The notes under the pieces are model-generated. The model was given only the letters and a program-made list of their open reading frames with translations. It ran no database searches and was not told where the DNA came from. 64,000 nt of DNA from the NCBI RefSeq assembly GCF_035594765.1, contig NC_085844.1, forward strand, positions 187,628,107 through 187,692,106, written 5' to 3'. Position 1 is the first letter of the stretch. Each line of letters opens with the position of its first letter. Below are positions 14,440-58,106 of the stretch, in pieces. The stretch is from Anolis carolinensis. Lineage: Eukaryota. A program made the translations under genes and the position numbers.

Positions 14440-14501
<62 letters not shown>

Positions 14502-26000: not shown

Positions 26001-29000
26001 GAGAACAAGCCCTATGAGGAGCGGCTTAAAGAGCTGGGCATGTTTAGCCTGCAGAAGAGGAGGCTAAGAGGAGACATGATGAGGGCCATGTATCAAGATG
26101 TGAGGAGAAGTCATAGGGAGGAGGGAGCAAGCTTGTTTTCTGCTGCCCTGGAGAATAGGACGTGGAACAACAGCTACAAACTAGAGGAAAAGAGATTCCA
26201 TCTAAACATTAGGAAGAACTCCCTAACTGTGAGAGTTGTTTGGCAGTGGAACACTCTGCTCCGGAGTGTGGTGGAGGCTCCTTCTTTGGAGGTTTTTAAA
26301 CAGAGGCTGGATGGCCATCTGTCGGGGGTGTTTTGAATGTGATTTTCCTGCTTCTTGGCAGGGGGTTGGACTGAATGGCCCAGAAGGTCTCTTCCAACTC
26401 TATGATTTCACAGGAAACCCTGGAACCAGTTCAAGGCCCGGATGGTGATGACAAAAACCACAAGACACTGATGAGTACTGGTAAAGTATCCCTTAACTGA
26501 AATGCTATGGCCCAGAAGTATTTGGGATTTTAAAATACTTACTGGTACATAATGAGACATTTGCAAACAGGATCTGAGTGCAAACATGAACACTTCATTT
26601 ACATTTCACATACATCTGAGAAATGTAGCCACAAGGCAATTTTAGACACAACGTTTTAACTAATAATAATAAACCTTATTTATAGTCAGATCTAGTTCCT
26701 GAGAAGATCATGATGCTGGGGAAAAAGGAAGAGCAAGATGGATGGATGGTATCCTGGAAGTGACTGGCTTGACCTTGAAGGAGCTGGGAGTGGTGACAGC
26801 TGACAGGGAGCTCTGGTGTGAGCTAGTTAATGAGATCACAAAAAGTCAGAAGCGACTGAATGAATAAACAAAAACATCTCCCCGAAGGGACTCAGGGTGG
26901 TTTCCAACATACAGCAACAATTCAATGCCCAAAGAAAACCATACAGTTTACATCAAGACAAAGCACATTAGACAATATAAACAACCTAACTGAACCTTAA
27001 TAAACAAAATGACAACAAATGAAATGACTAAAAATTTAAAAAATTAAAAACATAAAATACAAAAACCCTGATAAAACACATTAAAAATAAAATATATAAA
27101 ACTGAGTACATCAAAACTCCATCAGATGAGGTTCAGGATTCCTATGGTCAGGAGTACTAAAAAGGATCTAAGCTATATATATTAAAATGTAATGTGGCGC
27201 TTTATTATGGACTAAACAACAAAACCACTGAACCCAATCACACCAAATTTGGCCACAGAAAACATAGTCATCCAGTCTACATCTTTCAATCAAAAAAACC
27301 TAGAAAGATTGTCCAAATTACATAGGATGGGGAAGAGCCTTTCCCCCCCTAACTGCCAGTTAGAAAGGTAGGCTCTGCTGCCTTTAGCTGCCCCCCCCCC
27401 CCCCCGGCTTTAGGCCCTACCCCCTTTGTATCCTAGCAATTCCCTCAGCCAAAATGGTGCCCAGGGCACAGGCAGAGTGCACTTAGGCCTGATCCACACT
27501 GCCTATAAAATACAGATTATCTGATTTGAACTGGATTATATGGCAGTGGAGACTCAAGGCCCTCCCACACAGCTACAGTGTTCCCTCACTTATCACTGGG
27601 GTTAGGTTCCAGGACCACCCGCAATTAGTGAAAATCCATGAAGTAGGGACACTATATTTATTTTAATATTTATACATTATTTTAGTAGTTAAACACTGTT
27701 TTAAGTCTTTATCAACCAATCATGTGTTGATAAATCGCCTCCTTCTCCTCCTGTTGCCGCTTGGGCTCCTTTTCTCTCCCTTTGGCTTCTCCTTCCTTAG
27801 ACTGTAATTTGTCATTTTTTATGATTTATAATAGTAGTAGTAGTAGTAGTAAACTTTTATTACGGTCAATGACCAGCTCGGATTTATAATAGTCTTTTAG
27901 AGTTTATTTAAAAACCACGAAACAGCGAATCCACGAAAAGTGAACCGCGAAGTAGTGAGGGAACACTGTATATAACCCAGAATGCCAAGGCACATAATCC
28001 ACAGTATCTGCTTTGAACTGGATTACCTTGAGTCCACACTGCCATATGATCCACTTCAATGTGGATTTTATACAGCTGTGTAGAAGGGTCCTCATATAAT
28101 CCAGTATCCTGCTTGTTGATTTTAATGATTGTTTTTATTGATGTTGATGTTTTTTACTGGGATAATTTTTTTATTGCTTTGTTACTGTTATTTGTTTGTA
28201 TTATTGGGCCATGCCCCATGTAAGCCGCCTGAGTCCCTTCGGGGAGATGGGGCGGGGTATAAAAATAAAGTTATTATTATATTATTATTATTCTAAGCAG
28301 ATAATTTAAGATTATAAATATAATATGAAATAATTACTGTGGTATAATAATGCAGAACAATATAATCTCTAAAATCAGGACAATAAATAAAGAGCAACAC
28401 TTTGAAAACGGGAATTCCAGACAGGAAACAATCAGGGCCAGCTAACATCTCCCAACAAAGGATTCCCCCAGGCAGGAAGTATCCAGGCTTTCAAGCTGCA
28501 AGGCCATTAAATGCTAATCAAGGTGACTAATTGCAGCATTCATAATTGCTGCACAAAGACTATTAATTGCTATTCAACCTGGGCAACCAAGGATTCCACA
28601 AGGTAGAAAGCGGCCAGGCTTTTAACCTGCAAAACTATTCGGTGAAATTCAAGCTGGCCAAACAATGATTCCCCTACAAAGCAAGTAGCCAGGCTTCAAA
28701 GCGGCTCTTTGATTGAGGGTGCTACTCCAGCTCACCAAACAAGAATTCCCCTAGCTATAACACAGCCAGGCATTGAAGCTGCAAGGCTATTCAGTGCAAT
28801 TCAACCAGACCAACAAAGGATTAGAAGGCGGCCAGGCTTTCAAGCAGCGATACTACTCTGTACTATTGAAGCTGACCAACCAAAGATTCCCCTAGGTACC
28901 AAGCAGCCAGGCTTTGAAGTAGTGAGGCTATTCACTGCAATTCTAGCAGCCCAAAAATCATTCCCCTAGAATGTAAGTATCCAGCCTTCCAAGCAGCAAG

Positions 29001-30408
29001 CCTATTCTGTTGCATTCCAGCTCACCAAACAAGGATTACTAAAAGAAGATAGCCAGGCTTTGTGGCTGTAAGGCTATTCACTGCTATTCCGCCTGTCCAT
29101 CAATTGACTCCCATAAGCCACAGCAACACATGGCCGGGCACAGCTAGTTATCTATAAAAGGACTGGGTGAGGGGTAGTGCAAACAGTGTACCACTGGGCT
29201 GGGAAAGTGGGCGAGTTGTGCATGAAACCAGGTTTGTGTATGCTGAATTTTATCAGAGAGCAACGATATTCTATCTCAGCCCCTCATATAGACAATTTTG
29301 GTTTTTTGAGTATTTCAGGATATTTATATATTTATTGTGTCAGAAGCGAACCAAGGGTACAATTGTAATGTATTTGAAAAGACAAAGTTAAAAACTTGGC
29401 ATTATACTCAATGTCCTTTGACCAGTAGCTGGCCACGTGGAGTGCCTCTGGTGTTGCTATACGAAGGTCCTCCATTGTACATGTGGCAGGGCTCAGACTG
29501 CACTGTAATAGGTGGTCTGTGGTTTGCTCTTCTCCACACTCGAATGTCGTCAACTCCACTTTGTAGCCCCTTTTCTTAAGGTAGGCTCTGCATCTCATTG
29601 TGTTAGAGAGCAATCTATTCAGCACCTTCCAAGTTGCCCAGTTTGCTGTGTGCCCAGGAGGGAGACTCCCATTTGGTATGAGCCACGGGTTGAGGTTCCG
29701 GGTTTTAGCCTGCCACTTTTGGACTCTTGCTTGCTGAAGTGTTCCTGTAAGTATCTCTGTAGATCTTAGAAAACTATTTCTTGATTTAAAGCGTTGGCAT
29801 GCTGACGGATATCCGAACAGAGGATGGGCCGGAGACTCAGGAAGCGAGAGTCCAAAAGTGGCAGCCTAAAACCCGGAACCTCGATCAGTGGCTGTCGCCG
29901 GATGGTCAAAGGGCATTTGGTATAATGCCAAGTTTTAAAAAAACTTTGTGTTTTCAAATATATTACAACTTGTACCCTTGGTTCGCTTCTGATACAATAA
30001 ATAAACCAAAAGCGAACCCCATCCTCCATCATTGCATCCACACAGTAGCATTAAAGCAGTTAGCCACCACTTCAACTCCCACAGCTCAATGCTATGGCCT
30101 CATGGGAGTTGTAGACACAAACTACGAGTTCGAGGATCCCATAGTATTGTGCCATGGCTGTTAAAGTGTTGTCAAACTGCATTAATGCTGCAGTTTAGAT
30201 GCACCCTAGGGAGGCCTCCACTCACCTCGTCTTCACCCCTTGAAGGCAAATACTTCTTCAGCACTTCCAGCCGCAAAGGACCCGGCGCCTGAGCTTGGGC
30301 TCTCAAGCCCCGGAGCAAGCGTCGCTTTTCTCGATCGGTCCAAATTCGGGAGACGGGGCCCAAGTGGTAGCGAGCAGGAGCCGAGCGCGGCCTCGACGGG
30401 GGCTTCAT
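23004..30408 (-). CDS. SNAPC2: snRNA-activating protein complex subunit 2 (SNAP45), 335 aa, 5 exons
   Basis: Exons 30226-30408, 24661-24774, 24507-24575, 23905-24172, 23004-23377 (1008 nt) encode MKPPSRPRSAPARY...WTDREKRRLLRGL...PAPIEVWTALAEKMTG...AAFSQVLTIASTEP...VDFEKIYKYLS...ESAVLLDLLLSLPEEL...WKTLGICPLNSFMFPLDLL. Confidence 0.95.
25880..26410 (+). mobile_element. CR1 LINE 3' fragment
   Basis: ORF 25977-26336 ([31 protein letters not shown]) plus the CR1 3' tail. Confidence 0.92.
26700..26872 (+). mobile_element. RTE/Bov-B-type LINE 3' end
   Basis: EKIMMLGK...RWMDGILEVTGLTLKELGVVTADRELW...RKRLNE with a TGAATAAACAA tail. Confidence 0.7.
27167..29147 (+). mobile_element. Non-autonomous Helitron-like element carrying nested or captured TE pieces and ~60-bp tandem repeats
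   Basis: 5' TC..TATATATATTAAAATGTAATGT; 3' GCCACAGCAACACATGGCCGGGCACAG-CTAG followed by T; no TSD. Confidence 0.7.
27576..27968. mobile_element. Tigger-like MITE nested in the Helitron
   Basis: TIR CAGTGTTCCCTCACT / AGTGAGGGAACACTG with TA duplication. Confidence 0.85.
29325..30005. mobile_element. Two Vingi/Ingi-like LINE 3' pieces in inverted orientation (29325-~29805 on -, ~29830-30005 on +)
   Basis: ORF 29332-29625 (CGEEQTTDHLLQC...ATPEALHVASYWSKDI). Both pieces share GGTTCGCTTCTGA(C/T)ACAATAAATA ends and AGAGTCCAAAAGTGGCAG. Confidence 0.65.
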
Positions 30409-30753
30409 GGTAGTGAGGAGGGAAGAAACTAGTTCTCTGACCGCTATCGGGATCCTTCCTTCCTTCTACAGCAGCACACCGCCGCATAAGAATGACGTAC
30501 ACAGAACTTGGGAACGGTGGCCGGAGAGGATCATTTCCGGGAACGCCGCGGCTCCACTTTCTAGGGCGAACCTTGGGGAGAGCGGGTCGTTCCAGCGTGG
30601 TGACGTCACCAAGGAGCTCCAAGGACGCGCCTAGCAACCAAGGGATGGAACTTTGCGGGTGGACGCCCAGGGCTCCTCTCGTTGCCATGGCGACAGAAAC
30701 GCGACGCCCTCCGGCGCTCTGGAGCCGCCCAGCGGGGCCTTGAACCCGGCTTC
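30409..30753. promoter_or_regulatory. Bidirectional CpG promoter SNAPC2 / ZPBP-like gene with CRE and RFX X-box
   Basis: The two ATGs are 346 bp apart. TGACGTCA at 30601-30608; TGACGT at 30493; TTCCGG ETS-type site at ~30535; CCTAGCAAC at ~30630; GTTGCCATGGCGAC at 30681-30694. Confidence 0.75.
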
Positions 30754-33700
30754 ATGTCTTGGCCTGTAGTCGGAGTCGTTGTGTGGACCCTGGTCCTGTG
30801 GCTCTACAATGGGGCCAGTACGTGAAGAGGAGCTTCCCACAGCCTCCCTTTTACCCCCCCGGACTTTCTTTGAGGGGGGGTGTTTGTAAAAGGGAGTCTG
30901 CACGGTAGAATTAACGCAGTTTGATACCATTTTATGCTGTGGGATCCAGGTAGTTGCAGTTTGGTGAGGCATCATCAAACTTTGGTAGAGGAGGCTGAAG
31001 ATCTTGTGAAACTACAATTCCCCGAGCTATTAAAGTGGTGTCAAACTGCATTAATTCTACAGTGTAGATCAAGCATGGGCAAACTTTTAGCCATGACGAC
31101 AGTGGGTGCCAGCCATGGACAAACCTGGGCCCGCCAGGTGTTTTGGACTTCAACTCCCACCATTCTTAACAGCTTCAGGCCCCTTCCTTTTTCCCCACAT
31201 ATACAAGCGGCTGTGGGGGGAAAGGAAAGGGCCTGAAGCTGTTAGGAATCGTGGAAGTTGAAGTCCAAAACACCTGGCGGGCCCAGGTTTGTCCATGTCT
31301 GGTGTAGATGCACCCACTGTCGTCATGGCTAAAAGTCTTGTAAAACTACAACTTCCATGTGGAGGGAAGAACTGTATTGAAGTGTAAATGTTCCGAGATA
31401 CAGGAGACTGTGAATTTAATATAAGCCACTTTAGAGGTTTATTTAGTGAAATCAAAATACCCTGCATCATCAAGATTCGATGGTTCTAAAGCTGAATGAT
31501 GGGCTTCGCATGCAGAGCTTCATCAAGACCAGATCAAAGGCTAACCATTTTGTATGTTACGGATGAGGACTAAAGATACAGATTAGGATAACGCCAGACA
31601 TTTGCTTGGTATTATTTTACTTAAGCTACAGATAATTGGAAAGCACTTCTCCTCTGCAATTTGCCCGGCAGTGCCTCACTAGATAACAAAAGCAGCGCTT
31701 ATAGAAGATCCCATTCTACTTTAGTATTATTGCTGGCTTAAACATGAGGGAGCTGTGGGGTGGAGTCCAGGACTCACAAGTGCTGTTGCTTGGTCAACCC
31801 GAAATGAAATGTGTTGTCAAAGTCTTTCATGGATGGAATCACTGGGTTGCTGTGAGTTTTCCAGGCTGTATGTCCATGTTCCAGAAGCATTCTCTCCTGA
31901 TGTTTTGCCCAAATCTATGGCAGGCATCCTTAGAGGTTGTGAAGTCACAACTTCTGAGGATGCCTGTATAGATGTGGTTGAAATGTCAGTAGAGAATGCT
32001 TCTGGAACGTGGCCATACAGCCCGGAAAATTTACAGCAACCCAGTGAGTGAAATCTTATTGAGGTTCCCTATTCTTTCCAGGCTATGGACTGGATTCCCA
32101 TGAGTCATTTGACAATAAAACAGTTTCAAAACTGGATGACACTGAAGAGACAAAAACTACTGGAGAGACAGGTGAGAACATTAGAAAGATAAGTTACCAC
32201 TTCTCGGTGCTTCTATGTCCCAGAGGCCAGTGTCGCTTTATGATGGGGTGATGCCCTGTTACCAAGAAGGATATTGATCAGCTGGAACATATCCAGAGAA
32301 CGGTGACTAAAATGATCAAAGGTTTGGAAGCCAAGCCCTCTGAGGAACTGGCTGGTAAAGGACATGATAGACTGAGACTGAGAAGAGACATTATCAGCAT
32401 GTTTAAGTTTATGAAAGGGTGTCACTGAAGGCGGGACAAGTTTTTTGTTTTTATTTTTTTTTTTGCTGATCTGGAGATGAGAACAGAATAGAACAATGGA
32501 TTCAAATATCAAGAAAAGAGATTCCACCTAAACATTAGGAAGAACTTCCTGATGGTGAGAGCTGTTTGCAGGGCAATATGCTACTCCGGAGCTGGTGGAA
32601 TCTGCTTTTCTGGAGATTTTTAAGCAAGGCTGAAAGTCTATTTGTTGAGAATGCTTTGATTGTGTATTCCTGCATGGCAGGGGTTTAGACTGGACAGCCC
32701 TGTGGTCTCTTCCAACTCTATGGTTTTACTGTAGACAAGTAATTCCCAAACTCTAGGACAGGTGTTTTGGACTTCTATTCCCATAAGCCTTAGCTGATTT
32801 GGCCAATGATTAGGGATTTTGGAAAATGAAGTCCAAAACCTCTGGAGACCAGAATTTGGGAAACAACTGCCCTAGACCAACATGGGCAACTATAGAAGTC
32901 TGCAGGCTGCATTAATCTGACTTTCTGGAGATATTTAGCTGCTGAATCCCTTGCTGTGGTTCCCAGTAAAAAAAACTAAAATCAAAACATTCTGTCTCAT
33001 CTCTGCCATTTTAGGTCCGGGGGACTTTCTTTTATAAACAACTAGCTTGGGGACCCGGTGTTGCCCGGGTTATTTGAAAAAGGCATTATTTGTCTTTGAA
33101 TGTTATGTATTCTGTTTGGAGTGGGTGAACTACAATTCCCAGAATCATGGGTCAATCCTCCCCAAACCCTGCCATTATTCAAAGTTGGCCATTTTGGGTC
33201 TGTGTACCAAATGTGGGTCCAGATCTGTTGTTGGCTGGGTTCAGTGGTCTTTGGATACAGGTGAACTACAACTCCCAAAATCAAGGCCCATTCCCACAAA
33301 CCCCTGTAGTATGTTCAGTTGGTCATGTTCAGTTGCACAGAGGCTTCTCTGTGCAAAGTCTGCTCCTTGTCCATTGTCGGTGGGAGCCACTGTTTCTCTG
33401 GATGCAAGTGAACTATAAGTCCCTTTCCCCAAAACTTGTCCAATATGTTCTATTGGTTATGGGGACTCTGTGTGCCAAGTTTGGTCCTGATCCATCATGG
33501 GTAGGGTTCAATTGTAGGTGAACTATAAATCCCAGTACCTACTACTCCCAAATGTCCAGGCCAATTCCCCTCAAAACCCACCAATATTCAAATCTGGACA
33601 TATTAGGTATGCATGGCAAGTTTGGTCCAGACCCATCATTGTTTGGGTTCATAGCGTTCTGGGTGTAGGTGAACTACAACTCCTCTAAATTCCCCAGTAG

Positions 33701-36700
33701 GAGTCACAGGGCTCTGACTTGATGCAGGGTGAACTACAACTTCCACCATGTGGAGTCAATCCCCAAACTCCTCCAGGAAATTTAGTTGGTGCTCCATTTT
33801 GCTCTGTTTGTTATGCAGACAGATTTGAAAGGGAAGGGCAGTAGGCAGGGTCATGCAAATTCCACACCAATGGAGAACCCTGGGATGCCTGCCTGTGGTG
33901 GAGGAAAATGAAATGGTTCCCAAATGAAAGCATTCCTTGGGTGGTGGTTCGTAGTGTTTGGGAAGGACATTGGCAGGGTTTGGGATACATGTTCATGGAG
34001 CTCGTTGTAACCGCAATATCAGTGGAAAAGAGTGACTTGATGGCTCCTCAGCACTGGGAACTATAGCCTGTTTGTGGAGGCTGGAGGCTGTCTGTGTGAG
34101 CAGACACCTGTGCCACATACACACATACGGGTTTTCACTTTTATTATGGATACAGATAGATATAGATATGTAGATATAGATATAGATAGGAAGTTAGCAT
34201 ATATCATTTTTCTTTGATTCTTTTTTTAAAGGCATCTTCTTTGATTAAAATTGCCTGGGGATGAGGAAAACAGCAAGAATGCCCATTGGAGGGAATTTGG
34301 GCTCATTTTCTATTATTGGAGGCAGGGGAGCCTCAGAGGTCACAAAACATACCCTAGAGGGCTATACTTTTCCCATCCTGCTTTCTCATTTTCAGGACCC
34401 ATCTTTGTCCACATTGGAACCAAGGAAATCACTATACCTTGCAAGCCTGCAAAGTCTGCTGTGGCATTTGGTTTGAATCCCACCTACAATTGGACCAAAG
34501 AAAATGGAGGTAACCTAAGCATTGTTGCATAGGGATCTAGGTTTTTACATTGATGTCAAAAACTACTATTGGGTTGAGATATGGTGTTCTTGATATAGAG
34601 TGGGTGATTTGCTTTAAAGCAAAGACAGCTATGTTATCTGCAAAGAGAAAACCCAGTCCCACAGCCGGACAGTCTTTATGTGGACAAATTACCAGAAGTG
34701 TGCAAACTTTTGAGTTCTCCATAACTATTCATCAGCATAAGTGATACTGAGAACTTCTGAAGACCTACAAATCTTGTTCACTTTTGTGAGATTTTTGGGG
34801 GATGTTGATCTTACTAATAGTAATTTGAGAGGGGAGGAAAGCATTTGTGTGTCAGGCTTGTCAATATCTTTTTAGAATGATAAACACAGCTCCTCCTGTG
34901 GCCAGAATCAAGCATACCCTCATGAAGCCAGAAGCTGGAAATGTTAAATAGCCTCCGTGTCTCTGTCTCTGTGTTTCGTATGTCTATGGCATTGAATGTT
35001 TGCCATGTATATGTACATTGTGATCCACCCTGAGTCTCCTTCGGGGTGAGAAGGGTGAGATATTAATACTGTAAATAAATAAATAAATAAATAAATAAGA
35101 TAACTATAGTGACATAGGTATAATTTAAAAAAATTACAGGTAGTTCTAAATGTTAAGATCTGAGGACTTTTTACCCAAAGATTGTGCTTTGTGTGTAACT
35201 ATGCCTAAGTTATGAGTCCATATTGTCTTTAGGTTCATTATTAGTCATACATACATACACATACTCATCACACTCTGGAGAGACACATTCATCCCATCAA
35301 ACTTTCTTTCTTGTCCTGTACCATCATCTTTAAGAAGTTTTGAAAAGTGAACAGGAGAAGAGCCAATCTCTTTAGTTAGTCCCCATCTCCTCAGCTACTA
35401 CTATTAGTTGACCTTGTTCAACTAACTAAATTGAATTAGGATGTAATCTAAAGAGGCAGCAATGTGTTAGCATATCTGTCAGACATCCTGGAGAAGAAAC
35501 CAAGTTGATTAGAAACTGAATCCCTTGAATACCATTTAGTGCAAAGTAACATGGTTTAAGAGAAAGCAGAACAAAACACAAAACATAGTGGTAAAATTGT
35601 AACAATATATTTTCAATAATGCAAGCTGCCTGGTGTATAACTTCTGTAATAAGAGAATATGTACAGAATGTTAGAAGAGGTTTTGTGTAGACATTCACTC
35701 ATAGCAACAGAGTAACAAGAGAAAGCAGACTTACTTTCATAAATAGGGCAGAGGGCAGGGGAGAAATCAATGTATTCAAAGCTACAGAGTTTTCCTTACC
35801 AAATAGAATTGGAAAATACCTCACAACCTCTGAGGATGCCTGCCAGAGATGTGGGCAGTGAATGCGTCTGGAGTGAATGCTTCTGGACCATGGCTATACT
35901 TCTTGAAAAACTCACAGCAACCCAATGATTCCGGCCATGAAAGCCTTCGACAATACATGGAATTGGAAAAACGACTAAAGGGCTTTTATTGAAGCATTTC
36001 TACAGGACCACATTGGCTGATTGATTGGATTTTTTAACTCAGCATTTATGATTCTGCTGTCTGTTTCCAGGAGTCCATTTTCTTTCTGACGATGCTACCC
36101 TGACTATACATGCATTTAGTGCTGAGGATAGTGGACGCTACGTCTGTACCATATCCTACATTAAAGATGGCGAACTCAATACCAAGGTTTTCTATCACAC
36201 AGTGGCAGGTGCGTTCCTTCCTGCTATGCCAGTATAAATGTTTTGGTGGATGTTCCAGCAGAAGAGCCTTTATTTCCTTATGAAACATTCCTCACCTTGG
36301 GTACACAACAACAGTGGGAGGGCTCGTAGGCATGGTTCAGATTCCTTACATCTAAGGAGGATTTTGAGCTTTCCCCCTTCTTTCTTCCTCCTCCTTGGCA
36401 GTAAGAGAGAGAAAACTCCAGATCCAGTCTCCTCCTTGGAAGTTAGGCAGTTTTCAAAGCTCCAGATCCAGTTTCCTCCTTGGAAGTAAGGCAGTTTTCT
36501 AAAAGAAATACAAAGGGAGCTGGCTGGGTCTGGGGTTTTTCCTCTTTTACTTCCCAGGAGGAAGAAGATCCAGGAGGGAGAAGATACTTCCTTACCTCTG
36601 AAGAGGAGACTAGGTGAGGGGGTCCCCCTTTTCCCTACTCCTTCTTTGAAAATAAGAGAGGAAAAACCCCAGACACAGCTGGCTCCACACATTTTTCTCT

Positions 36701-39700
36701 CTTTGCATAATGGCCGTACCCCCTTTTCCCAAGGAAATAAAAGGGATAAAAAGTGTGGCTATTACATGGTGAATGATGGTAATTTTCTGTCTTTTTCCCC
36801 AGGCTATCATATACGTGGAGAGCTGCAGGTCCTCATGGTTTATGAGACCAACACCTGTGATGATGAATTGACTGGCAAATTTTTGAAGACTCTGCATGAA
36901 CATCTGAATAAAGTGGTGTCTGACTTCAATGCTAATATCCTTCTTGGGGACATCACTTGCTTCCCAACTTTGGATAAACCCACAGATCAATTCAACCTCC
37001 AGGTAGAGCTAAAAGGTCAGAACCAAGAAATATATGAGTTTGGAAATAATGGCACAGGAACTTAGGAGAATTTAGTTCATTAAACATGTGGGGCAGAAAT
37101 AAAATTTAGAGCAATAAAAGGGGCTGCAAAACAATGGGATTTACCAGCTAGGCTGCCTTGTGAAAACATCTGATTGTTCTTGTTTAATGGATTCCTTTCA
37201 ACTTATACAATCCAAGGACATGGGAGGAATGAGGGCAACTACTTGTTCTCTGGACTCTTGCCCATCCTGGCAAATTAAATCAGCTGGGGGGGGGGGGGGG
37301 ACTGGCAAAATGGGTGAAGGTGCTGGTGAATACCTCCTTAACCTAAGACCGAGTGCCAATTAGTTTCAAGGAGGCAGCAGTAAGACCTTTGTTAAAGAAA
37401 CCGGCACTGGATCCCACTCAACTGAATAATTATTGGCCTGTATCAACTCTCCTCTTCCTGGACAAGGTTCTAGATAAGATGGTGGCCCCTCAACTCCAAA
37501 GCTTCTTGGATGAAACCAATTTTCTGGATCGATTTCAATCTTGTTTCAGGACTGGCAATGGAACTGAGACGGCATTGGTTGCCTTGTTGGATTATCTATG
37601 AAGAGAGCTAGACTGGGGAGTGTGTCCCTATTGGTTCTCCTGAACCTCTCAGTGGCGTTTGATAACATCAACCATGGTATCCTTCTGGACCGGCTCTCCG
37701 AGATGGGTCTAGGGATCACTGTTTTACAGTGGCTCCAGTCCTTCCTGGAGGATTGGACCCAGATGGTGGTGCTGGGGGGCATCTGTTCTACTCCCTGGGT
37801 GGTGGCTTGTGGGGTGCCTCAGGGTTCAATTTTGTCCCCCATGCTGTTTAACATTTACATGAAACGGCTGGAAGAGATCATCCAGAATTTTGAAGTTCGG
37901 TGTCAAATTTATGCCGATGACACTCAACTTTATTACTCCTTTCCACCCAAGGATGCACCGGTGCCTGTCATCAGTAAAGGACTGGTTGAGGGCTAACAAG
38001 TTGAACAAGACAGAGGTACTCCTGGTCAGTCGGAAGGCAGTTCAGGGTATAGGGTTATAGCCTGTGTTGGATGGGGTTGCACTCCCCCCTGGAGACAGAG
38101 GTTTGCAGCTCGGGGGTGATCCTGGACTCATCGCTGACCCTGGAACCTCAGGTGTCAGCGGTGGCCAGGAACACCTTCGCACAGCTAAAATTTGTGCGCC
38201 TGCTATGCCTATACCTTGAGATGCCAGATCTGGCCATGGTAGTCCACACCTTAGTTACATCCCATCTGGACTACTATAACACTCTCTACATGCAGCTGCC
38301 TTTGAAGACAGCTTTGAAGCTTCAACTAGTCCAAAGATCGGCAGCCAGGTTATTAACTGGAGCGCCATACAGGGATAAAACCACTCCCCTGTTGCGGCAG
38401 TTCCATTGGCTGCCAGTCTGCTTCCAGGCTAAATGCAAAGTGCTGTTACGGTATTACCTATATAGCCCTAAAAATGTTCTTTCATGTTCTTTGACTCGTG
38501 TTTGGGCGCTGCGTTTGGTGGTCCAGACACGAGTCAAAGAACATGAAAGGCACTGCAGACTAACTCAACCAGAGAAATCAGCCATAGCAGAGCACTTGAT
38601 GAACCAACCTGGACACAGTATATTATTTGAGAACACAGAAATGCTTGACCACTCCAACAACTATCATGTCAGACTACACAGAGAGCCATTGAAATCCACA
38701 AGCATGTGGACAACTTCAACAGAAAGGAGGAAACCATGAAAATGAACAAAATCTGGCTAACAGTATTAAAAAACTCAAAAATCAGAACAGTAAATAAGAA
38801 GCAACACTCTGCAAACAGAGGAGTTCCAGACAGGGACAGCTAATGATGCTGAACAAAGGATGCCCCCAGGCAGGAAAGGCCAGGAGATGAACCTTTTCAA
38901 TGCTAATTAGGGTGATTAACTGCAACATTCACACTGGTCTACAACTGACAAAGAGTTCTTCTCTCACCCTGGACTTTCCACAGATATATATAAACCTTCC
39001 TTGCTTAGTTTCTCTATACCTCACAACCTCTGAGGATGCCTGCCATAGATGTGGGCGAAACGTCAGGAGAGAATACATGGCCATACAGTTCAGAAAACAT
39101 ACAACAACCCAATGTCATTTGTTGCATCTATAAATATAGTGAATAACGAACAGTATGGAATAAACATGTTTTTTTATATCAATATTCTGAAGTGTTGCTT
39201 AGAATTTGTACTCTGATGGGTCTGATAAAAGAATTGATCCCCTGATTGGGACAGCTTGAGGACAATAATGCATTTGTCTTTGTTTTCTAGTGTCTCCCTT
39301 CAAGGAGGGCTGGGATGAGTCCTGTGACCCCAAGGCGGATGATCTGGCAATAGAATGTTACCATACAGCTATCCATACCAATCTGCAGAAGGTGTGTCAC
39401 CAGAACTCCTCTCTGTTCTACTAGAAAATGGTTTGATACAGTTTTGTATGTACTTATTTATGCCCGTGGAGAAGCTTCTGTTAACAGTGCAAAAGTATTT
39501 TATCTAATTGATAAATCACACTAGAACCAAAATGAACGTGTTGCATTGTTTCCCATGGAAGGCTGTCTTTCAGAGCAAAGGGAGCATAAACTGCTCTCTT
39601 CTATTCTTCTCACTTGCTTTGGTACCAACACACTGTCTTCCATTGTGTGTACATCCTGAACCCTCAAATTGGCACTAGACAGCAGCTAACATAAAACACG

Positions 39701-42700
39701 GACTATTTACTGTGGGACAAGACTCAATAATTCTATGCTTATTTATCAGGTTTAACAGGTTAAGTTGAACAATGCTTCTGTACAAAGCATGCATTATGGA
39801 ATTGCTTCTATTTGTGCATTCCCTTTTATGTAACATTGACATGACAGTGTTGTTAAATCATTATCCTCCTGTGTATTCACTATGCTTCTTGTATTCCTTC
39901 TTTGGTTAAGCAGACACATGTAGCCGTGTGATCATGTAATGCATACACTATCCTGTCTGATCCTTCAGTTTTTATCTCCCTTCCCTTTCTTCTCTAACTA
40001 CTATAGGCCAAAGAAGCCCTCACAGAGTTCCTGAATGACAACAAATACTTCCCTGTGGGAGACTCACTAGCTTCCAATACTACCTTTAACAATACCTTCT
40101 TCAACTTCCTGGAGGGTGGAAAATGCCAGAACGGTTACGGACAGACACAGGAGCTAGAGACACACTGTCCCGACTGCTGTAGTGAGTGGAGCAGGTGATC
40201 TATGAGATGCTGCCTCATCCCTCCTCAGACACTGCCTTTGGTAACACAGACTGCAGTTTCTGTTTACATCCTTGGGAAACAACTCATCATGTGGTTATTT
40301 TGTTTGTTTGTTTAAAATAGTAGTAGTAGTAATAATAATAAATTTTATTTGTTACCCACCTTTCCTAATGGTTCGAGGCAGGGTACAACAGTAAAAACAT
40401 ATCAAAATATAATGCATAGATAAAACCACGCCATTATTAAAAGTATACACCAAACACAGGGAACAAAAATTAATATACCACAATAGAATACAAATTCAAA
40501 AGTCATGATACAAAGTTGACTGGGTAGGCCTGCGGGAAGACATAGGTATTTAATTCTGTTTGAAATTCTGATAGCTTGTTTAGCTTTTGGAGTTTTTCTG
40601 GCAGGTCATTCAACAGTCTAGGGATGAATCATGAAAAGCGGTCTGGGTGACCCTTGTGTTACCTTATATAAAGCATTTATTTATTGCCTCTCTATCTGCC
40701 AGAACTCCAAGGAAATGTATAGCCAAGAAGCATTATTGAAATATTAAATATAAACAGATACATATATTATTTAAATGCAAACTAAAAAAATTTCTAAGAA
40801 AACAGCAAAAAGAACCACACATGTGAGGACAGCCAGAACAATCACTCTGGTTTTGAGGAACAAAGGCCATGTGAAATAATATAGCTATAGCTGCTCAGTA
40901 GAAGCTCAGTAGGTACAACATAGAAAGTCCTGCTATTTCTATTTACCAATCTATTCCCTAGGGCTATAGGACAAGCAGCAGTCTCTGCTCACAATCTCAA
41001 ATTTCAGACAAATTCATATGGGAGGAGGCAGTTGTTTAGATACACTGATACCAAGCCGTTTAGCTCTCTGTCAATTAAAACCAATCCCTTTGTTTGAACC
41101 TGGAAGCAAATTGAAAGCCAGTGTTATTGATGCAAAGCTGGTGATACATCATCTTGAAAGTACATATCCAGCAACAGTTGTCCCCTTTTCATTGTCTTTT
41201 GTGAGTTTGTTAATGCCGTCCATGTTATAGTCCTGTATCGGATTTCATGTAGTCGGAACCAGCCCAGTCATTGAGCAGTATTGCAGCATGTATGAGTTCA
41301 CTTAATCAAATAGCTATAACTCACCACAGTATAATCCAACCCACCAAGAGCTGGAAAGGGGAATGTATTTTGTGCAGGGCCTATTTTGTAGCTGGCCAAC
41401 TTGACCCCCCCCCCCCCCCACACACACACACACACAGCTTGATGGAGGAATTAAACTGCTTTCAAAAACCCATGCATTGATCTTCTGAGTTTATCAACCT
41501 CTTTTTGCTTGTATCTGCCCATTGTGTGTGACAGTGTTGTGCCCTCCTGGGACATACAGCGAGGCCACAGTTGACAACTGTGTTCTTTGTCCATTGGGGA
41601 GCTACAGCCTGCACTATGGATCAACTGCCTGTATTCAGTGCCAGCACAACCTGCTTACTTCAGAGCCTGGTGCCAGCAGAGCTGAAGACTGCTTGAGTTT
41701 AAGAGGTATGTACTAGACTGGGACATTGTCACAAGGTGGTGGATTTTATTTCCTTAAACACCATTTGAGAACTTTTTATATGAATTCTTAGACTGACAGA
41801 TTTTGAAGGCCATACTGGACAAAATATATCATAACAAATAATAATATAATCTGGGAAGGAGACTGATAACATTTGGCCCATAGTTAGCTGGGAGGACAGA
41901 TTTCTACTTTGGGAGGGTTTTCACCCAGCACAAAGGCAAACTTTATAGAATGGATATTTCTTTAGATAGCAATAGAGATGGAAAGTGTCCCAGCACTTCT
42001 GAAACATGGCCATACAGCCCAGAAAACACACAACAGCTCTGTCCTAGCGCTACGTTTTCTCCAAACATAATCATGAGCATCCCCTTAAGCTCATGTCAGG
42101 CACCTTTTAAATTCTGGTAGTTGCTTGTTAAATGCAGATGCATTTAAAGTTTTATTTAAATTGAACCTGAGCAACTCATCATTTTTCCATTAGTGACACA
42201 AACCAGCGGAAGAGGTGAGAGCTAGTATTCTAGTGATCTCTGAGAAAGTGTGTGAGGTGTCATGGATGAATTCTATATTGTTAAGTAAAAGTCCTCAAAT
42301 CCAATCTTATGAACATGCAGTAGGTGATCACTTGTGAGAATATGTGGAATGGGGGTTTTCTGATAACAATATTTATGTATATCGCCTGGACTAGTACATA
42401 TTCCTGATTAGAATAGGTTCTTGGTTTCATTGGTTTACTTCTGGAAGCTGTGATTGATAATATGCCTAGCTAAAGCTCTTGAGTGACTTATGTTTCTTTT
42501 CACACAGTCCATTCATCACACCGGATTTCCTTACTGGTGGTAGCCTTTTCCTTACCACCACTTTTGTGCTTCTGCTTCATTGTGTTGTAAGTTCTGGGAT
42601 ATTTACTTTGCCTATCTAACCTCAGTACTCTAAAATATTGCAGAACAAATGGATTTATGTCGTGGGTCGTTGGGTAATGTTAATCCACTGAGGAGTTATT

Positions 42701-43614
42701 TGAGCATTTAAAGAGGTAGAATGATATGAACAAATTGAGCCAAAGGAATGGATCTGAACTGCAGACATGTTGGCTTGCTGATGAAACTTGGCTACCAGGT
42801 TGGTCCATTCACTCGCAGTGCTACTTGAAGAAGATCCATGTGGTGTTAGTATTCCCTACATCCTTAAACTGTCCCTGCCCACATTTTGTATAGAACAATA
42901 CAGGGAGATATGTCAGCTAAGATCTGTATGCCATGTAGTTCTAAGAGATTATCTATCACCTTCTGCAGTTTTTGCTATTGCTTTCGTCGTTACTGGCAGA
43001 AAAAAAGTCTTTTCACTGCAAAAGAAGAGATGGAACAGGAGGAAGACCTCCCAGCCCTTCTAGACACACAAGAACAAGAACATGGCAGTCCCATGCTACC
43101 TGCTAATCTGGAGTATATTGATAAGGCAGCAGCCATGTTTTCACCTTATGGCGACAAAGCAACGGTGCTTCAATCCCCTGCAATTGAAGCAGCCACATAT
43201 TCACCTCCTGGCAGCAAAGCAGACATAGTATCCCCTGCTGGAATTGAGGCAGGCACGTTATCACCTGACATCAAAGCAGCCACAGCATCACCTCCTGTAT
43301 ATGAAGCAGCTGTAGTATCACCACCTGGAAATGAAGCAGCCTTATATTCACCTTCTCGTGATGAAGCTGCTGTGGTTTCACCTTCTGCTAAAGGTAGTGC
43401 CCTTCTGACACCTAAAGTAGAAGAATCTCCTGTGATGACTCCTAGTACAGAGTATCCTTCTATCAAAGAAGAAGTTGAAACTTCGCCTCCTAGTGGGGAC
43501 GAAGAACCTCCTCAGGATAACAGCCCAGAAGGAGCTCTAGAAGGAGAAGAATCTGTTAATATGGAAAACATTGAGTTCCCACCGTCTTCACCTGCCTCTG
43601 TAGAAAGTGCATGA
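30754..43614 (+). CDS. Zona pellucida-binding protein (ZPBP/Sp38)-like type I transmembrane protein, 596 aa, 10 exons
   Basis: Exons 30754-30817, 32082-32171, 34396-34509, 36071-36208, 36803-37015, 39291-39391, 40007-40181, 41535-41705, 42508-42586, 42969-43614 (1791 nt, all AG/GT, phases consistent, no stops). Signal peptide MSWPVVGVVVWTLVLWLYNGA; Ig motifs IPC..YNW..LTIHAFSAEDSGRYVC; ZPBP-type AKEALTEFLN and KCQNGYG..HCPDCCMLCPPGTYS; TM ISLLVVAFSLPPLLCFCFIVFFCYCF-RRYWQKK. Confidence 0.85.
31083..31336. mobile_element. Palindromic hAT-type MITE with extra inverted flanks
   Basis: Inner element 31110-31301 is near-palindromic (CAGCCATGGACAAACC...GGTTTGTCCATGTCTG). Perfect 27-bp inverted arms at 31083-31109 and 31310-31336. 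Confidence 0.75.
31815..32047. mobile_element. Inverted pair of Penelope pseudo-LTR fragments
   Basis: ...GGCATCCTTAGAGGTTGTGA AG TCACAACTTCTGAGGATGCC... head-to-head copies of the sequence at 6830-6960. Confidence 0.75.
32250..32722 (+). mobile_element. CR1 LINE 3' fragment (older)
   Basis: Similar to 25880-26410, ending TCTCTTCCAACTCTATG. Confidence 0.8.
33042..34187 (-). mobile_element. Non-autonomous Helitron-like element with internal tandem repeats
   Basis: On the - strand: 5' (TCTATA)n..ATAATAAAAGTGAAA; 3' ACCCGG..CCGGGT hairpin followed by CTAG-T at 33042. Repeated GCCAAGTTTGGTCC...GGTGAACTACAACTCCC units. Confidence 0.7.
34890..35098 (+). mobile_element. SINE 3' part with an L2-type tail
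   Basis: CCCTGAGTCTCCTTCGGGGTGAGAAGGG stem-loop plus (AAAT)n. Confidence 0.65.
35815..35957 (+). mobile_element. Penelope pseudo-LTR fragment
   Basis: Matches 6826-6962; the hammerhead region is disrupted. Confidence 0.75.
37150..38472 (+). mobile_element. L2 LINE fragment, decayed
   Basis: ORFs 37160-37363, 37353-37601, 37598-37996 and 38071 onward contain RT motifs GVPQGSILSP and YADD, with frameshifts. Confidence 0.9.
38520..39115 (+). mobile_element. Penelope-like element 3' part (GIY-YIG C-terminus plus pseudo-LTR)
   Basis: QTRVKEHERHCRLTQPEKSAIAEHLMNQPGHSILFENTEMLD is a typical PLE GIY-YIG tail. Confidence 0.88.
39027..39067 (+). ncRNA. Minimal type I hammerhead ribozyme motif of the Penelope element
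   Basis: CCU-CUGAGGA-U-GCCUGC(CAUAGAU)GUGGGC-GAAA-CG-UC-AGG: intact CUGANGA/GAAA core, 6-bp stem II, palindromic ACGU minimal stem III, 3-bp stem I. Confidence 0.75.
43141..43446 (+). repeat. Coding ~30-bp (10-aa) degenerate tandem repeat with 11 S/T-P units
   Basis: S/T-P codons at 43141, 43174, 43201, 43231, 43261, 43288, 43318, 43348, 43378, 43408, 43438. Confidence 0.85.
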
Positions 43615-50562: not shown

Positions 50563-50625
<63 letters not shown>

Positions 50626-50643
50626 AAGAGAGAGAAAGAGAAA
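50563..50643. repeat. (GA)n microsatellite
   Basis: Direct reading. Confidence 0.95.
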
Positions 50644-51402
50644 GCGGGGGTGGGGGGTGGGGTGGGGTTAGGGTTATCCATAGAAGTTTTCTCCAGCACC
50701 ACATTTCAAATCTATGTGCCATTGTTTTGTTTTCCGTATACTTACATATCATTAAAAGAAAACCCCAAATACTGTAATGTAATTACAAGTACAAAATATC
50801 TCTCTGTATGGAGAAGTCTGAGTCCATCTATTCCATACACTTGTTCTGCTTGCTATTCAGGGGTGAATTACTGGTGGGCAACCTATAAGCTCATGATCTT
50901 TTTTGCACCTTATTACATTGGGATTTACTCTTTTTATATCAGTATTCCCTATTTTAAAAGAACTGGATACATATTATATTCAGATGTGATGCATACTAAT
51001 CCCATCATACCTGATTCTTATGTCTTGAAAATACTGCACTTTGACTCATCACATCATGGAAGACTGACTCCTCCCAGGCCATTCGAATGCCTCCCCACAT
51101 TGCTTTTAAAAAAATAATCTAATATTGAGCAGCGACATATCCTGGAAGCCTTGAACTACTATTTTCGTGAGATTTTAGCTTGACAGAATGCATACTGATT
51201 TTACAATACCTAGACAGAGTATGACACAGCAAACGAGATATATATGTTGGAATTCGTATCACGGAATCACAAGTCGAACACTCACATTATTACAATCACA
51301 TTATTTTATTATGACACAGCAAACAAGATAGATATGCTGGATTTCGTTTCACAAAATCACAAGTCGAACACTTCCCAAGTGTCTAGGACTGTGTGATGTA
51401 TC

Positions 51403-54499: not shown

Positions 54500-54589
54500 T
54501 AGCTATAAAGTCCACTGTCAATGGTATCTAACCCCACAGGTCTTAGCTAAAATATATAAAACTAGGAAAGGTTTATGCTTGAAATTTAT

Positions 54590-57033: not shown

Positions 57034-58106
57034 CCTCCTTTTATGCCCCAGCCTCAGGAGGCAGCAGATGTTTCTGCTGGGCCTTGCTTCAGCCAGGCAG
57101 TCAGGGCCAGAGTCTGCAAGGAGCCATTCACCAGGAGCTGAGGTCAAAGGCAGCCTGCAGCAAACAAACACTGCCCTTTCCTCCAAGCTCCTCGTTGTTG
57201 ATGTTCCATGGCTGTCTAAGATGGTGCTGGGTGACTGGGCCCCCACCAGCATCCTCCTTTTATGCCCCAGCCTCAGGAGGCAGCAGGTGTTTTGGCTGGG
57301 CCTTGCTTCAGCCAGGCAGTCAGGGCCAGAGTCTGCAAGGAGCCATTCACCAGGAGCTGAGGTCAAAGGCAGCCTGCAGCAAACAAACACTGCCCTTTCC
57401 TCCAAGCTCCTCATTGTTGGTGTTCCATGGCTGTCTAAGATGGTGCTGGGCGACTGGGCCCCCACCAGCATCCTCCTTTTATGCCCCAGCCTCAGGAGGC
57501 AGCAGGTGTTTCGGCTGGGCCTTGCTTCAGCCAGGCAGTCAGGGCTAGAGTCTGCAAGGAGCCATTCACCAGGAGCTGAGGTCAAAGGCAGCCTGCAGCA
57601 AACAAACACTGCCCTTTCCTCCAAGCTCCTCGTTGTTGATGTTCCATGGCTGTCTAAGATGGTGCTGGGTGACTGGGCCCCCACCAGCATCCTCCTTTTA
57701 TGCCCCAGCCTCAGGAGGCAGCAGGTGTTTTGGCTGGGCCTTGCTTCAGCCAGGCAGTCAGGGCCAGAGTCTGCAAGGAGCCATTCACCAGGAGCTGAGG
57801 TCAAAGGCAGCCTGCAGCAAACAAACACTGCCCTTTCCTCCAAGCTCCTCATTGTTGGTGTTCCATGGCTGTCTAAGATGGTGCTGGGCGACTGGGCCCC
57901 CACCAGCATCCTCCTTTTATGCCCCAGCCTCAGGAGGCAGCAGGTGTTTCGGCTGGGCCTTGCTTCAGCCAGGCAGTCAGGGCTAGAGTCTGCAAGGAGC
58001 CATTCACCAGGAGCTGAGGTCAAAGGCAGCCTGCAGCAAACAAACACTGCCCTTTCCTCCAAGCTCCTCATTGTTGGTGTTCCATGGCTGTCTAAGATGG
58101 TGCTGG
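57034..58106. repeat. 219-bp tandem repeat, ~4.9 copies
   Basis: Unit starts (CCTCCTTTTATGCCCCAGCC) at 57034, 57253, 57472, 57691, 57910. Copies differ at only a few positions. Confidence 0.95.

What the first reader, a model, noticed from the sequence alone, without database searches (positions are those of the whole stretch)
30754..43614. Membrane-anchored, receptor-like ZPBP paralog (signal peptide-Ig-Sp38-Cys-rich-TM-long cytoplasmic tail)
Seen in sequence: ten exons splice in phase into a stop-free 596-aa protein. Its ectodomain aligns by eye with ZPBP1/Sp38 (Ig DSGRYVC, YETNTCD, AKEALTEFLN, CQNGYG, CPDCCMLCPPGTYS). Where ZPBP1/2 end after a short Cys module, this protein continues with a longer Cys-rich segment (CVLCPLGSYSLHYGSTACIQC..PGASRAEDC, ephrin-receptor-like/GCC type), a 26-aa hydrophobic helix followed by RR..KK, and about 210 cytoplasmic residues. 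Established knowledge: mammalian ZPBP1 and ZPBP2 are secreted intra-acrosomal proteins with no TM, and they sit beside IKZF1 and IKZF3. Inference: this is a third, receptor-type branch at a non-IKZF locus, possibly a reptile sperm-surface or inner-acrosomal-membrane egg-coat receptor absent from mammals.
Basis: partly seen in the sequence, partly recalled or inferred. Interest (0 to 1): 0.85.

Follow-up and report, generated by a model that had tools for sequence, protein, structure and literature searches.

The report
Membrane-anchored ZPBP-like gene of reptiles and birds
This is a real green-anole gene, already predicted in databases but never studied, for a membrane-spanning relative of the mammalian sperm proteins ZPBP1/2; reptiles and birds all keep one copy, and no mammalian copy turned up.

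Summary
Ten exons with AG/GT borders (30754-43614, + strand) join in frame into a stop-free 596-aa protein. RefSeq's Anolis carolinensis LOC100564912 isoform X2 (576 aa) can be rebuilt exactly from the window using one alternative donor and acceptor.

The protein has a probable signal peptide, an Ig-like domain, a ferredoxin/S6-like alpha-beta domain, an EGF_Sp38_C plus Ephrin_rec_like cysteine module, one conserved transmembrane helix and a ~205-residue disordered acidic tail.

Single-copy orthologues occur in lizards, snakes, turtles, alligator and many birds, usually auto-named 'ZPBP2-like' or 'uncharacterized'. Their tree follows the species tree. No mammal, amphibian or fish hit appeared, but the searches have known blind spots.

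ZPBP kinship is supported by Pfam (EGF_Sp38_C 44/44 orthologues, Sp38 Ig 33/44), language-model neighbours and a modest fold match.

In Anolis and Podarcis the gene lies head-to-head with SNAPC2, downstream of PIF1. No IKZF motif was found in the window.

Two things were not shown. No tree with real ZPBP1/2 could be built, because no tool returned their sequences. 'Third branch' and 'sperm egg-coat receptor' therefore remain inferences. No searched paper describes a membrane-anchored ZPBP.

The parts
30754..30817 (+). Exon 1: start codon and hydrophobic N-terminus (probable signal peptide), ends in phase 1
   Evidence: 100% match to residues 1-22 of RefSeq isoform P0050. GT donor at 30818. The signal peptide was judged by eye only.
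32082..32171 (+). Exon 2: 30-aa acidic, poorly conserved linker with one N-x-T site
   Evidence: AG/GT borders and phase 1-1. 100% match to P0050 23-52, but only 60% to A. sagrei.
34396..34509 (+). Exon 3: first half of the Ig-like domain (PIFVHIG...PCKP...YNW)
   Evidence: H, P-C and Y-x-W are invariant in 44 orthologues.
36071..36208 (+). Exon 4: second half of the Ig-like domain (DSGRYVC)
   Evidence: Weak Pfam Ig hits on the exon alone: V-set E 3.9e-4, Sp38 N-Ig E 0.13. The Ig fold in the model of the A. sagrei orthologue scores Z 9.8.
36803..37015 (+). Exon 5: start of the alpha-beta (ferredoxin/S6-like) middle domain (GYHIRGEL...YETNTCD...CFPT)
   Evidence: This exon found the orthologues when used as query. 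The donor at 37016 was chosen because orthologues read ...QVELKVSPF. No Pfam family.
39291..39391 (+). Exon 6: middle domain (SPFKEGWDESC...CYH...NLQK)
   Evidence: W-D and two Cys are invariant.
40007..40181 (+). Exon 7: end of the middle domain and start of the EGF_Sp38_C module (CQNGYGQT...CPDCC). Isoform X2 uses an alternative donor at 40194.
41535..41705 (+). Exon 8: Ephrin_rec_like (GCC2/GCC3-type) cysteine-rich module. Isoform X2 uses an alternative acceptor at 41608.
   Evidence: Pfam PF07699 E 2.4e-11, 43.7 bits, covering profile positions 1-48 of 48. Borders.
42508..42586 (+). Exon 9: short stalk and most of the transmembrane helix (ISLLVVAFSLPPLLCFCFIV)
   Evidence: Kyte-Doolittle 19-residue mean up to 2.64. 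The L-P-P-L-x-C-x-C motif is conserved across non-avian reptiles.
42969..43614 (+). Exon 10: end of the TM helix, basic RRYWQKK stop-transfer, about 205-residue E/A/P/S-rich tail with a short 30-nt repeat, conserved C-terminal FPPSSP motif, stop codon
   Evidence: 100% match to P0050 363-576. Composition and C-terminal motif. Tandem repeat at 43274-43341.
30409..30753 (.). 345-bp spacer between the start codons of SNAPC2 (- strand) and this gene (+ strand); probable shared bidirectional promoter
   Evidence: SNAPC2 first exon 30175-30408 (-) gives Pfam PF11035 E 5.4e-9. The same head-to-head order occurs in Podarcis, locus L013. The promoter function is inferred.

Best explanation
The stretch is the green anole gene LOC100564912. 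It has ten exons and encodes a type-I membrane glycoprotein of the ZPBP (Sp38) family. Shown here: the gene model; a luminal/extracellular part built of an Ig-like domain, a ferredoxin/S6-like alpha-beta domain and an EGF_Sp38_C plus Ephrin_rec_like cysteine module; one conserved TM helix; and a long disordered tail. One copy is inherited vertically in squamates, turtles, crocodilians and birds. In squamates the locus is SNAPC2/PIF1, not IKZF. Inferred: it is a separate, membrane-anchored branch of the ZPBP family that mammals lack. It would work in spermatids and sperm as an integral acrosomal-membrane version of ZPBP. Its ectodomain would face the acrosomal lumen, where it would hold matrix proteins and be exposed to the egg's perivitelline (ZP) coat after the acrosome reaction. 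Its proline-rich tail (conserved FPPSSP/FPPPP end) and membrane-proximal cysteines would tie it to cytosolic sorting or cytoskeletal partners.
For: Gene model: (596 aa, AG/GT borders, RefSeq isoform rebuilt exactly). Orthologues: (more than 70 sauropsid proteins, TM retained). Alignments show an invariant cysteine framework and a conserved TM motif. The gene tree follows the species tree with one copy per species. ZPBP kinship: Pfam EGF_Sp38_C in 44/44, Ephrin_rec_like in 44/44 and Sp38 N-terminal Ig in 33/44 orthologues. The nearest named Atlas clusters are ZPBP1 (0.94) and ZPBP2 (0.93 and 0.92). The model matches a ZPBP2 cluster at TM 0.45/0.56 over 206 residues. Fold: AF2 pLDDT 82, pTM 0.73; Ig Z 9.8; S6-like domain Z 9.1. 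Locus: PIF1 and SNAPC2, in the same order in Podarcis. The exon-5 peptide, searched against 1.84 billion representatives, found only sauropsid proteins of this family and no canonical ZPBP1/2, as expected for a distinct branch.
Against: No tree including true ZPBP1/2 was possible, so 'separate branch' is not proven. Some birds carry the name ZPBP2 for this gene. The Sp38 N-terminal Ig model is not significant on the Anolis proteins themselves. The structural match to ZPBP2 is modest (TM about 0.5). The absence from mammals rests on searches limited by word filters or by a 66-aa query. The signal peptide was not tested with a predictor.
Confidence: 0.6

Rival explanations
1. It is simply the sauropsid orthologue of mammalian ZPBP2, not a third paralogue. 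Either the ancestral ZPBP2 was membrane-anchored and mammals lost the TM and tail exons, or sauropsids gained them, and the gene changed neighbourhood.
For: Many bird records call it 'ZPBP2 protein' or 'zona pellucida-binding protein 2'. Atlas neighbours include ZPBP2 clusters, and 11% of one canonical ZPBP2 cluster also hits Ephrin_rec_like. No second sauropsid ZPBP2 was seen in my searches.
Against: In squamates the gene lies by SNAPC2/PIF1, and no IKZF motif was found in the window. RefSeq leaves it as LOC/'-like'/'uncharacterized' in Anolis, Podarcis, Mauremys, Alligator and many birds, which means no orthology call to ZPBP2. A paper states that birds have both ZPBP1 and ZPBP2, citing Lin 2007 (PMC7647744), but which gene is meant is unknown. 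My searches could not have seen canonical ZPBP2 because of the word filter, so their silence means little.
Confidence: 0.25
2. It is a ZPBP-fold cell-surface receptor or adhesion protein used outside reproduction (somatic tissues). In that case family kinship does not predict its role.
For: No expression evidence of any kind was obtained. It shares a bidirectional promoter region with the housekeeping gene SNAPC2. Ig plus cysteine-rich plus TM plus long tail is a generic receptor layout, and the fold hits are mostly to generic Ig receptors.
Against: All characterised family members are acrosomal (established knowledge; PMC4492047). Divergence is fast, at 33-38% identity between Anolis and archelosaurs with long branches, which is typical of reproductive proteins but not specific to them.
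Confidence: 0.12
3. The long protein is an annotation artefact: a ZPBP-like gene wrongly joined to unrelated downstream TM and tail exons, or a decaying pseudogene.
For: Some database models are truncated or read into introns (P0005, P0007, P0006). Isoform X2 disrupts the Ephrin module.
Against: The same ectodomain-TM-tail order is predicted independently in more than 40 species. TM residues are conserved, and the reading frame is intact in squamates, turtles, alligator and birds. The compact duck locus carries the TM and tail exons within 1.2 kb of the Ephrin exon. The window has no stop or frameshift.
Confidence: 0.03

Closest known systems
ZPBP1 (sp38 / IAM38) of mammals
   Same: The ectodomain plan is the same: Ig-like N-terminal domain (Pfam Sp38), a middle domain with a conserved cysteine framework, and a C-terminal EGF_Sp38_C module. 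The nearest language-model cluster is ZPBP1, at 0.94.
   Different: ZPBP1 has no TM helix and no cytoplasmic tail. It is an acrosomal matrix or peripheral inner-acrosomal-membrane protein next to IKZF1 (established knowledge, not tested here). The present protein has a full Ephrin_rec_like unit, a TM helix and a ~205-residue tail, and lies by SNAPC2/PIF1. Sequence similarity is too low for a 66-aa phmmer query to find ZPBP1.
ZPBP2 of mammals
   Same: It belongs to the same family by Pfam. An Atlas ZPBP2 cluster matches the predicted structure at TM 0.45/0.56 over 206 residues. Databases borrow its name for this gene.
   Different: ZPBP2 is secreted and acrosomal, about 340 aa, with no TM, and lies beside IKZF3 (established knowledge). 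Orthology to the present gene was neither shown nor excluded.
IZUMO1 / SPACA6 / TMEM95-type sperm membrane proteins
   Same: They are type-I membrane proteins with an Ig-like domain, used on the acrosomal membrane and exposed after the acrosome reaction. The Ig domain of the model aligns to SPACA6 (Z 8.9) and IZUMO1 (Z 8.5).
   Different: Those Z values are no better than for dozens of unrelated Ig domains. There is no Izumo four-helix domain. This is an analogy of layout only, not kinship.
N-terminal region of alpha-dystroglycan (Ig-like plus ribosomal-S6-like domain)
   Same: It has the same two-domain arrangement of an Ig-like domain followed by a ferredoxin/S6-like alpha-beta domain. Foldseek hits 1u2c and 5llk at E about 1e-4, and the S6 fold scores Z 9.1.
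   Different: The similarity is in the predicted fold only, with 9% identity and low TM-scores for the pair of domains. No functional link is implied.
GCC2/GCC3 (Ephrin_rec_like) repeat proteins: SCUBE, thyroglobulin, ELAPOR1
   Same: Exon 8 is a bona fide Ephrin_rec_like unit (E 2.4e-11). Thyroglobulin and SCUBE appear among the fold hits.
   Different: Those proteins carry arrays of the unit in other contexts. Here there is a single unit fused to the ZPBP-type EGF module.

Membership tests
ZPBP / Sp38 family | C-terminal EGF-like cysteine module (Pfam PF20626 EGF_Sp38_C) | tested here: met
   44/44 orthologues at E<=1e-3. A. sagrei orthologue scores 34.2 bits against a cut-off of 24. The module spans window exons 7-8, so single exons do not score. 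The joined Anolis model was not sent to any search.
ZPBP / Sp38 family | N-terminal Sp38 Ig domain (Pfam PF07354) | tested here: inconclusive
   33/44 orthologues at E<=1e-3, best 5e-8. The turtle scores 23.0 bits against a cut-off of 23.1. Both Anolis proteins fail to reach it, and window exon 4 alone gives E 0.13. The domain is Ig-like by predicted structure.
ZPBP / Sp38 family | Overall similarity to ZPBP1/2 beyond the Pfam pieces | tested here: met
   The three nearest named Atlas clusters are ZPBP1/ZPBP2, at 0.92-0.94 with 206-216 shared features. The fold matches a ZPBP2 cluster at TM 0.45/0.56. Both are leads rather than alignments.
ZPBP1 or ZPBP2 orthologue (canonical) | Secreted protein ending after the cysteine module, with no TM segment | tested here: not met
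   A 26-residue hydrophobic helix, a basic stop-transfer and a ~205-residue tail are present. They are conserved across sauropsids.
ZPBP1 or ZPBP2 orthologue (canonical) | Position beside IKZF1 or IKZF3 | tested here: not met
   Upstream lie SNAPC2 (head-to-head) and PIF1, in the same order in Podarcis. No IKZF-type motif was found in the window. The 20 kb downstream is repeat-rich with no gene recognised. Archosaur and turtle neighbours were not resolved within 10 kb.
ZPBP1 or ZPBP2 orthologue (canonical) | Placement within the ZPBP1 or ZPBP2 clade in a tree | not testable with these tools
   No genuine ZPBP1/2 sequence was returned by any search.
ZPBP / Sp38 family | Testis-specific, acrosomal expression | not testable with these tools
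Ephrin_rec_like (GCC2/GCC3) domain proteins | Match to PF07699 over its full length | tested here: met
   Window exon 8: E 2.4e-11, 43.7 bits against a cut-off of 23.1, profile positions 1-48 of 48. 44/44 orthologues match.
Type-I single-pass membrane proteins | N-terminal signal peptide plus one TM helix with positive-inside flank | tested here: inconclusive
   The TM helix and the RRYWQKK flank are clear. The N-terminal hydrophobic stretch MSWPVVGVVVWTLVLWLYNGAS was judged by eye only. No SignalP or DeepTMHMM is available.

The most novel reading that the evidence does not exclude
Sauropsids keep an integral-membrane ZPBP that serves as the sperm's built-in inner-acrosomal-membrane receptor for the egg's perivitelline (ZP) coat. 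Mammals would cover this role with peripheral ZPBP1 and unknown anchors. The membrane-anchored form might even be the ancestral state of the family. That would name a candidate for the still unidentified avian and reptilian sperm receptor for the egg coat.
Probability: 0.22. Interest if true: 0.75.

Novelty: new variant of a known kind. Interest (0 to 1): 0.5.

Why it matters
ZPBP1 and ZPBP2 are needed for acrosome formation and sperm head shape in mice, and they are candidate zona-binding proteins. How they are held on the inner acrosomal membrane is unclear. The sperm-side receptors for the egg coat in birds and reptiles are also poorly known.

A conserved, single-copy family member with its own membrane anchor and a long cytoplasmic tail gives a concrete, testable candidate. 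Chicken is the obvious system, using primordial-germ-cell knock-outs and perivitelline-layer binding assays.

The finding also warns that many database records labelled 'ZPBP2' or 'ZPBP2-like' in birds and reptiles are this different, membrane-bound protein. That could mislead selection scans and proteome studies that cite 'ZPBP2'.

The predicted fold of the family (Ig + S6-like domain + cysteine module) may also be useful for the mammalian proteins.

Tried and rejected
- **Retrieving true ZPBP1/2 for a tree.** I tried phmmer of exon 5 against 1.84 billion representatives and three word-indexed searches: Pogona protein, an 8-sequence profile, and a 12-sequence profile at E<=10. All returned only the TM family or unrelated Ephrin-repeat proteins. 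The decisive tree was therefore not built.
- **Expression.** The Logan contigs of the bird orthologues are genomic, with introns read through, and give no transcript evidence.
- **Atlas search with exon 5 alone.** It gave only meaningless short bacterial clusters.
- **Neighbours in birds, turtle and alligator.** Six 24-27 kb loci list no other gene. Motif and tblastn scans for PIF1, SNAPC2, ORMDL, IKZF and GSDM found nothing. A cross-bird comparison of the flanks showed only frame-independent non-coding similarity.
- **Literature.** Seven searches found no description of a membrane-anchored ZPBP. Lin et al. 2007 (PMC2099232) is not held. Papers that mention bird or tortoise 'ZPBP2' do not say which gene they mean.
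- **Alternative exon choices rejected.** A donor at 37002 with an acceptor at 39305 keeps the frame but drops the conserved VSPF segment seen in all orthologues.
- **Joined model.** The joined 596-aa model was never sent to a search, fold or family tool. Searches used single exons by reference or stored orthologue proteins. The join was made only inside a local script, to count length and stops and to compare with P0050.
- **Complex prediction.** Complex prediction was not used, because no specific partner is claimed.


Full report
**What is in the sequence**

Reading the splice sites and comparing with orthologues gives ten exons:
- 30754-30817
- 32082-32171
- 34396-34509
- 36071-36208
- 36803-37015
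- 39291-39391
- 40007-40181
- 41535-41705
- 42508-42586
- 42969-43614

All internal borders are AG...GT and the phases chain. The coding sum is 1791 nt, which is 596 codons plus a stop, with no internal stop.

A public protein returned by the homology search is P0050, 'uncharacterized protein LOC100564912 isoform X2 [Anolis carolinensis]', 576 aa. It maps at 100% identity to these ten blocks. It is rebuilt exactly when an alternative donor (40194) and acceptor (41608) are used. The close relative A. sagrei has that form (P0049, 604 aa).

Searches used exon references or stored orthologue proteins. The join was only counted in a local script.

**Architecture**

- Exon 1 encodes a hydrophobic N-terminus. 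I take it for a signal peptide by eye only.
- Exon 2 encodes a poorly conserved acidic linker.
- Exons 3-4 give weak Ig hits.
- Exon 8 alone is a full Ephrin_rec_like unit (E 2.4e-11).
- Exons 9-10 encode the helix ISLLVVAFSLPPLLCFCFIVFFCYCF, with a Kyte-Doolittle mean up to 2.64, followed by RRYWQKK.
- The tail is about 205 residues, rich in E, A, P and S (13% each). It contains a short 30-nt repeat and ends in ...IEFPPSSPASVESA.

An AlphaFold2 model was made of the A. sagrei ectodomain with a 44-sequence alignment (pLDDT 82, pTM 0.73). It shows three parts:
- An Ig-like domain (model residues 25-117; best Z 9.8).
- An alpha-beta domain of the ferredoxin/ribosomal-S6 type (120-263; Z 9.1 to S6, rmsd 3.0 over 94 residues). 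Foldseek also finds the Ig+S6 pair of alpha-dystroglycan and the MAD12 domain of protocadherin-15.
- A disulfide-rich C-terminal module.

**Relatives**

The 66-aa exon-5 peptide was searched against 1.84 billion representatives. It found only proteins of this kind. Further searches gave more than 70 proteins from these groups:
- Lizards: Pogona, Phrynocephalus, Sceloporus, Phrynosoma, Podarcis, Rhineura, Varanus.
- Snakes.
- Turtles: Mauremys, Natator, Chelydra, Caretta, Chrysemys.
- Alligator.
- Many birds, from emu and tinamou to chicken, duck, parrots and penguins.

Their names vary: 'zona pellucida-binding protein 2-like', 'ZPBP2 protein', 'ZPBP1-like', 'uncharacterized protein', 'Ig-like domain-containing protein' and once 'mucin-1-like'.

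All full-length models keep the TM helix and a tail. The compact duck-like locus L001 has the TM and tail exons right after the Ephrin exon. The cysteine framework is invariant, and in non-avian reptiles so is an L-P-P-L-x-C-x-C-x-I-x-L-x-C pattern inside the helix.

An ML tree of 27 orthologues follows the species tree. Squamates separate from turtles, alligator and birds, and within birds palaeognaths, Galloanserae and Neoaves are recovered. There is one copy per species, and branches are long. Anolis is only 33-38% identical to archelosaur proteins.

No mammal, amphibian or fish protein appeared. Given the word filter of one tool and the short query of the other, this is suggestive, not proof.

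**Kinship with ZPBP**

- Pfam's two ZPBP models both hit. EGF_Sp38_C matches 44 of 44 orthologues. The Sp38 N-terminal Ig domain matches 33 of 44 (best 5e-8), but not the Anolis proteins themselves.
- A protein-language-model search of the ectodomain puts ZPBP1 (0.94) and ZPBP2 (0.93, 0.92) clusters first.
- The model matches a canonical ZPBP2 cluster at TM 0.45/0.56 over 206 residues. Its own family forms a separate Atlas cluster in which 94% of members carry Ephrin_rec_like.

**Locus**

- PIF1 helicase lies upstream on the + strand, with exons from 9416 to 21279.
- SNAPC2 lies on the - strand from about 23007 to 30408 (Pfam E 2e-23 and 5e-9).
- The SNAPC2 start codon is 345 bp from the start codon of this gene, so the two are head-to-head.
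- Podarcis raffonei has the same order, PIF1 then SNAPC2 then the gene.
- No IKZF-like motif occurs in the window, and the 20 kb downstream is mostly repeats.
- In birds, turtle and alligator nothing recognisable lies within 10 kb. The bird gene sits on 5-8 Mb chromosomes in the chromosome-level assemblies seen. Their synteny is unresolved.

**How it most likely works (inference)**

All studied family members are acrosomal proteins of spermatids and sperm (established knowledge; PMC4492047). ZPBP1 is described as associated with the inner acrosomal membrane without having an anchor of its own.

A paralogue with a signal peptide, the same ectodomain plan and its own TM helix would be delivered to the acrosomal membrane with the ZPBP part facing the lumen. 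There it could organise matrix proteins. After the acrosome reaction it could present a ZP-binding surface to the perivitelline layer.

The tail could connect to sorting or cytoskeletal factors. The relevant features are the conserved acidic-FPPSSP end in squamates, EFVFPPPP/FVFPSPP in alligator and turtles, and the cluster of cysteines at the cytosolic face, which are possible palmitoylation sites.

None of this was tested.

**Rivals**

- The main rival is that this is the sauropsid counterpart of ZPBP2 itself. It could not be excluded because no true ZPBP1/2 sequence could be obtained for a tree.
- Points against that rival are the different locus in squamates and the lack of an orthology-based name in most RefSeq annotations.
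- A somatic receptor role is possible.
- An annotation artefact is very unlikely, given conservation in more than 40 species.

**Novelty**

The gene models are public, so the sequence is not new. I found no paper that notes a membrane-anchored ZPBP-family protein.

I rate it a new variant of a known kind. It is of moderate interest now, and of more interest if the tree and testis expression come out as inferred.

Noticed in passing
window 9416-21279 (+): PIF1 DNA helicase gene. Exon 1 is a long ORF (9416-~10100), and later exons carry [25 protein letters not shown] and LSRARS. The last coding exon matches human PIF1 structures at E 2e-21.
   Followed up: partly
window 23007-30408 (-): SNAPC2 (snRNA-activating complex subunit 2). 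The first exon is 30175-30408 and the last coding exon 23007-23393, with Pfam PF11035 at E 5e-9 and 2e-23. It lies head-to-head with the ZPBP-like gene, 345 bp between the start codons. PIF1 next to SNAPC2 is also seen in Podarcis (L013). From memory, these two genes are on different chromosomes in human (15q22 and 19p13).
   Followed up: partly
window 40182-40194 and 41535-41607: RefSeq isoform X2 uses an alternative donor and acceptor. This replaces 25 residues of the Ephrin_rec_like module, including four of its cysteines, by SEWSS. The module should then not fold, so this may be a regulated or noise isoform.
   Followed up: partly
window 37353-38739 (+), inside intron 5: A fragment of a non-LTR retrotransposon in the sense orientation within the gene (reverse transcriptase, Pfam RVT_1 E 3.6e-17).
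   Followed up: partly
window 52533-54521 (-); also 3-413 (+) and 14857-15519 (-): A 663-aa open reverse-transcriptase ORF of the same kind of non-LTR element (RVT_1 E 8e-38), with further decayed copies. The long open frame suggests a young insertion.
   Followed up: partly
window 57034-58106: Tandem array of 4.9 copies of a 219-bp unit at 97% identity. It produces long spurious ORFs on both strands (435 and 377 aa).
   Followed up: partly
window 14440-14520 and 50590-50680: (GA)n/(AG)n microsatellites, read as poly-ER in ORF lists. The first lies in a PIF1 intron.
   Followed up: no
orthologues P0043 (Sceloporus), P0003/P0002 (Podarcis), P0055/P0057 (turtles), P0024 (alligator): The cytoplasmic tails carry lineage-specific tandem peptide repeats. 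Sceloporus has six FPPPVNE(T/A)A units, Podarcis has DSPLLPSPTLENAEKD units, and turtles and alligator have ~25-residue A/S/P-rich units. The membrane-proximal part and the C-terminal end stay conserved. Bird tails are much shorter.
   Followed up: partly
database names of the orthologues: Naming is inconsistent. Isoforms of the single Pogona gene are called ZPBP1 and ZPBP2, many birds are labelled 'ZPBP2 protein', and Chrysemys is labelled 'mucin-1-like'. Studies that report 'ZPBP2' in birds or tortoises (PMC6993853, PMC12225707, PMC7647744) may be referring to this membrane protein.
   Followed up: no
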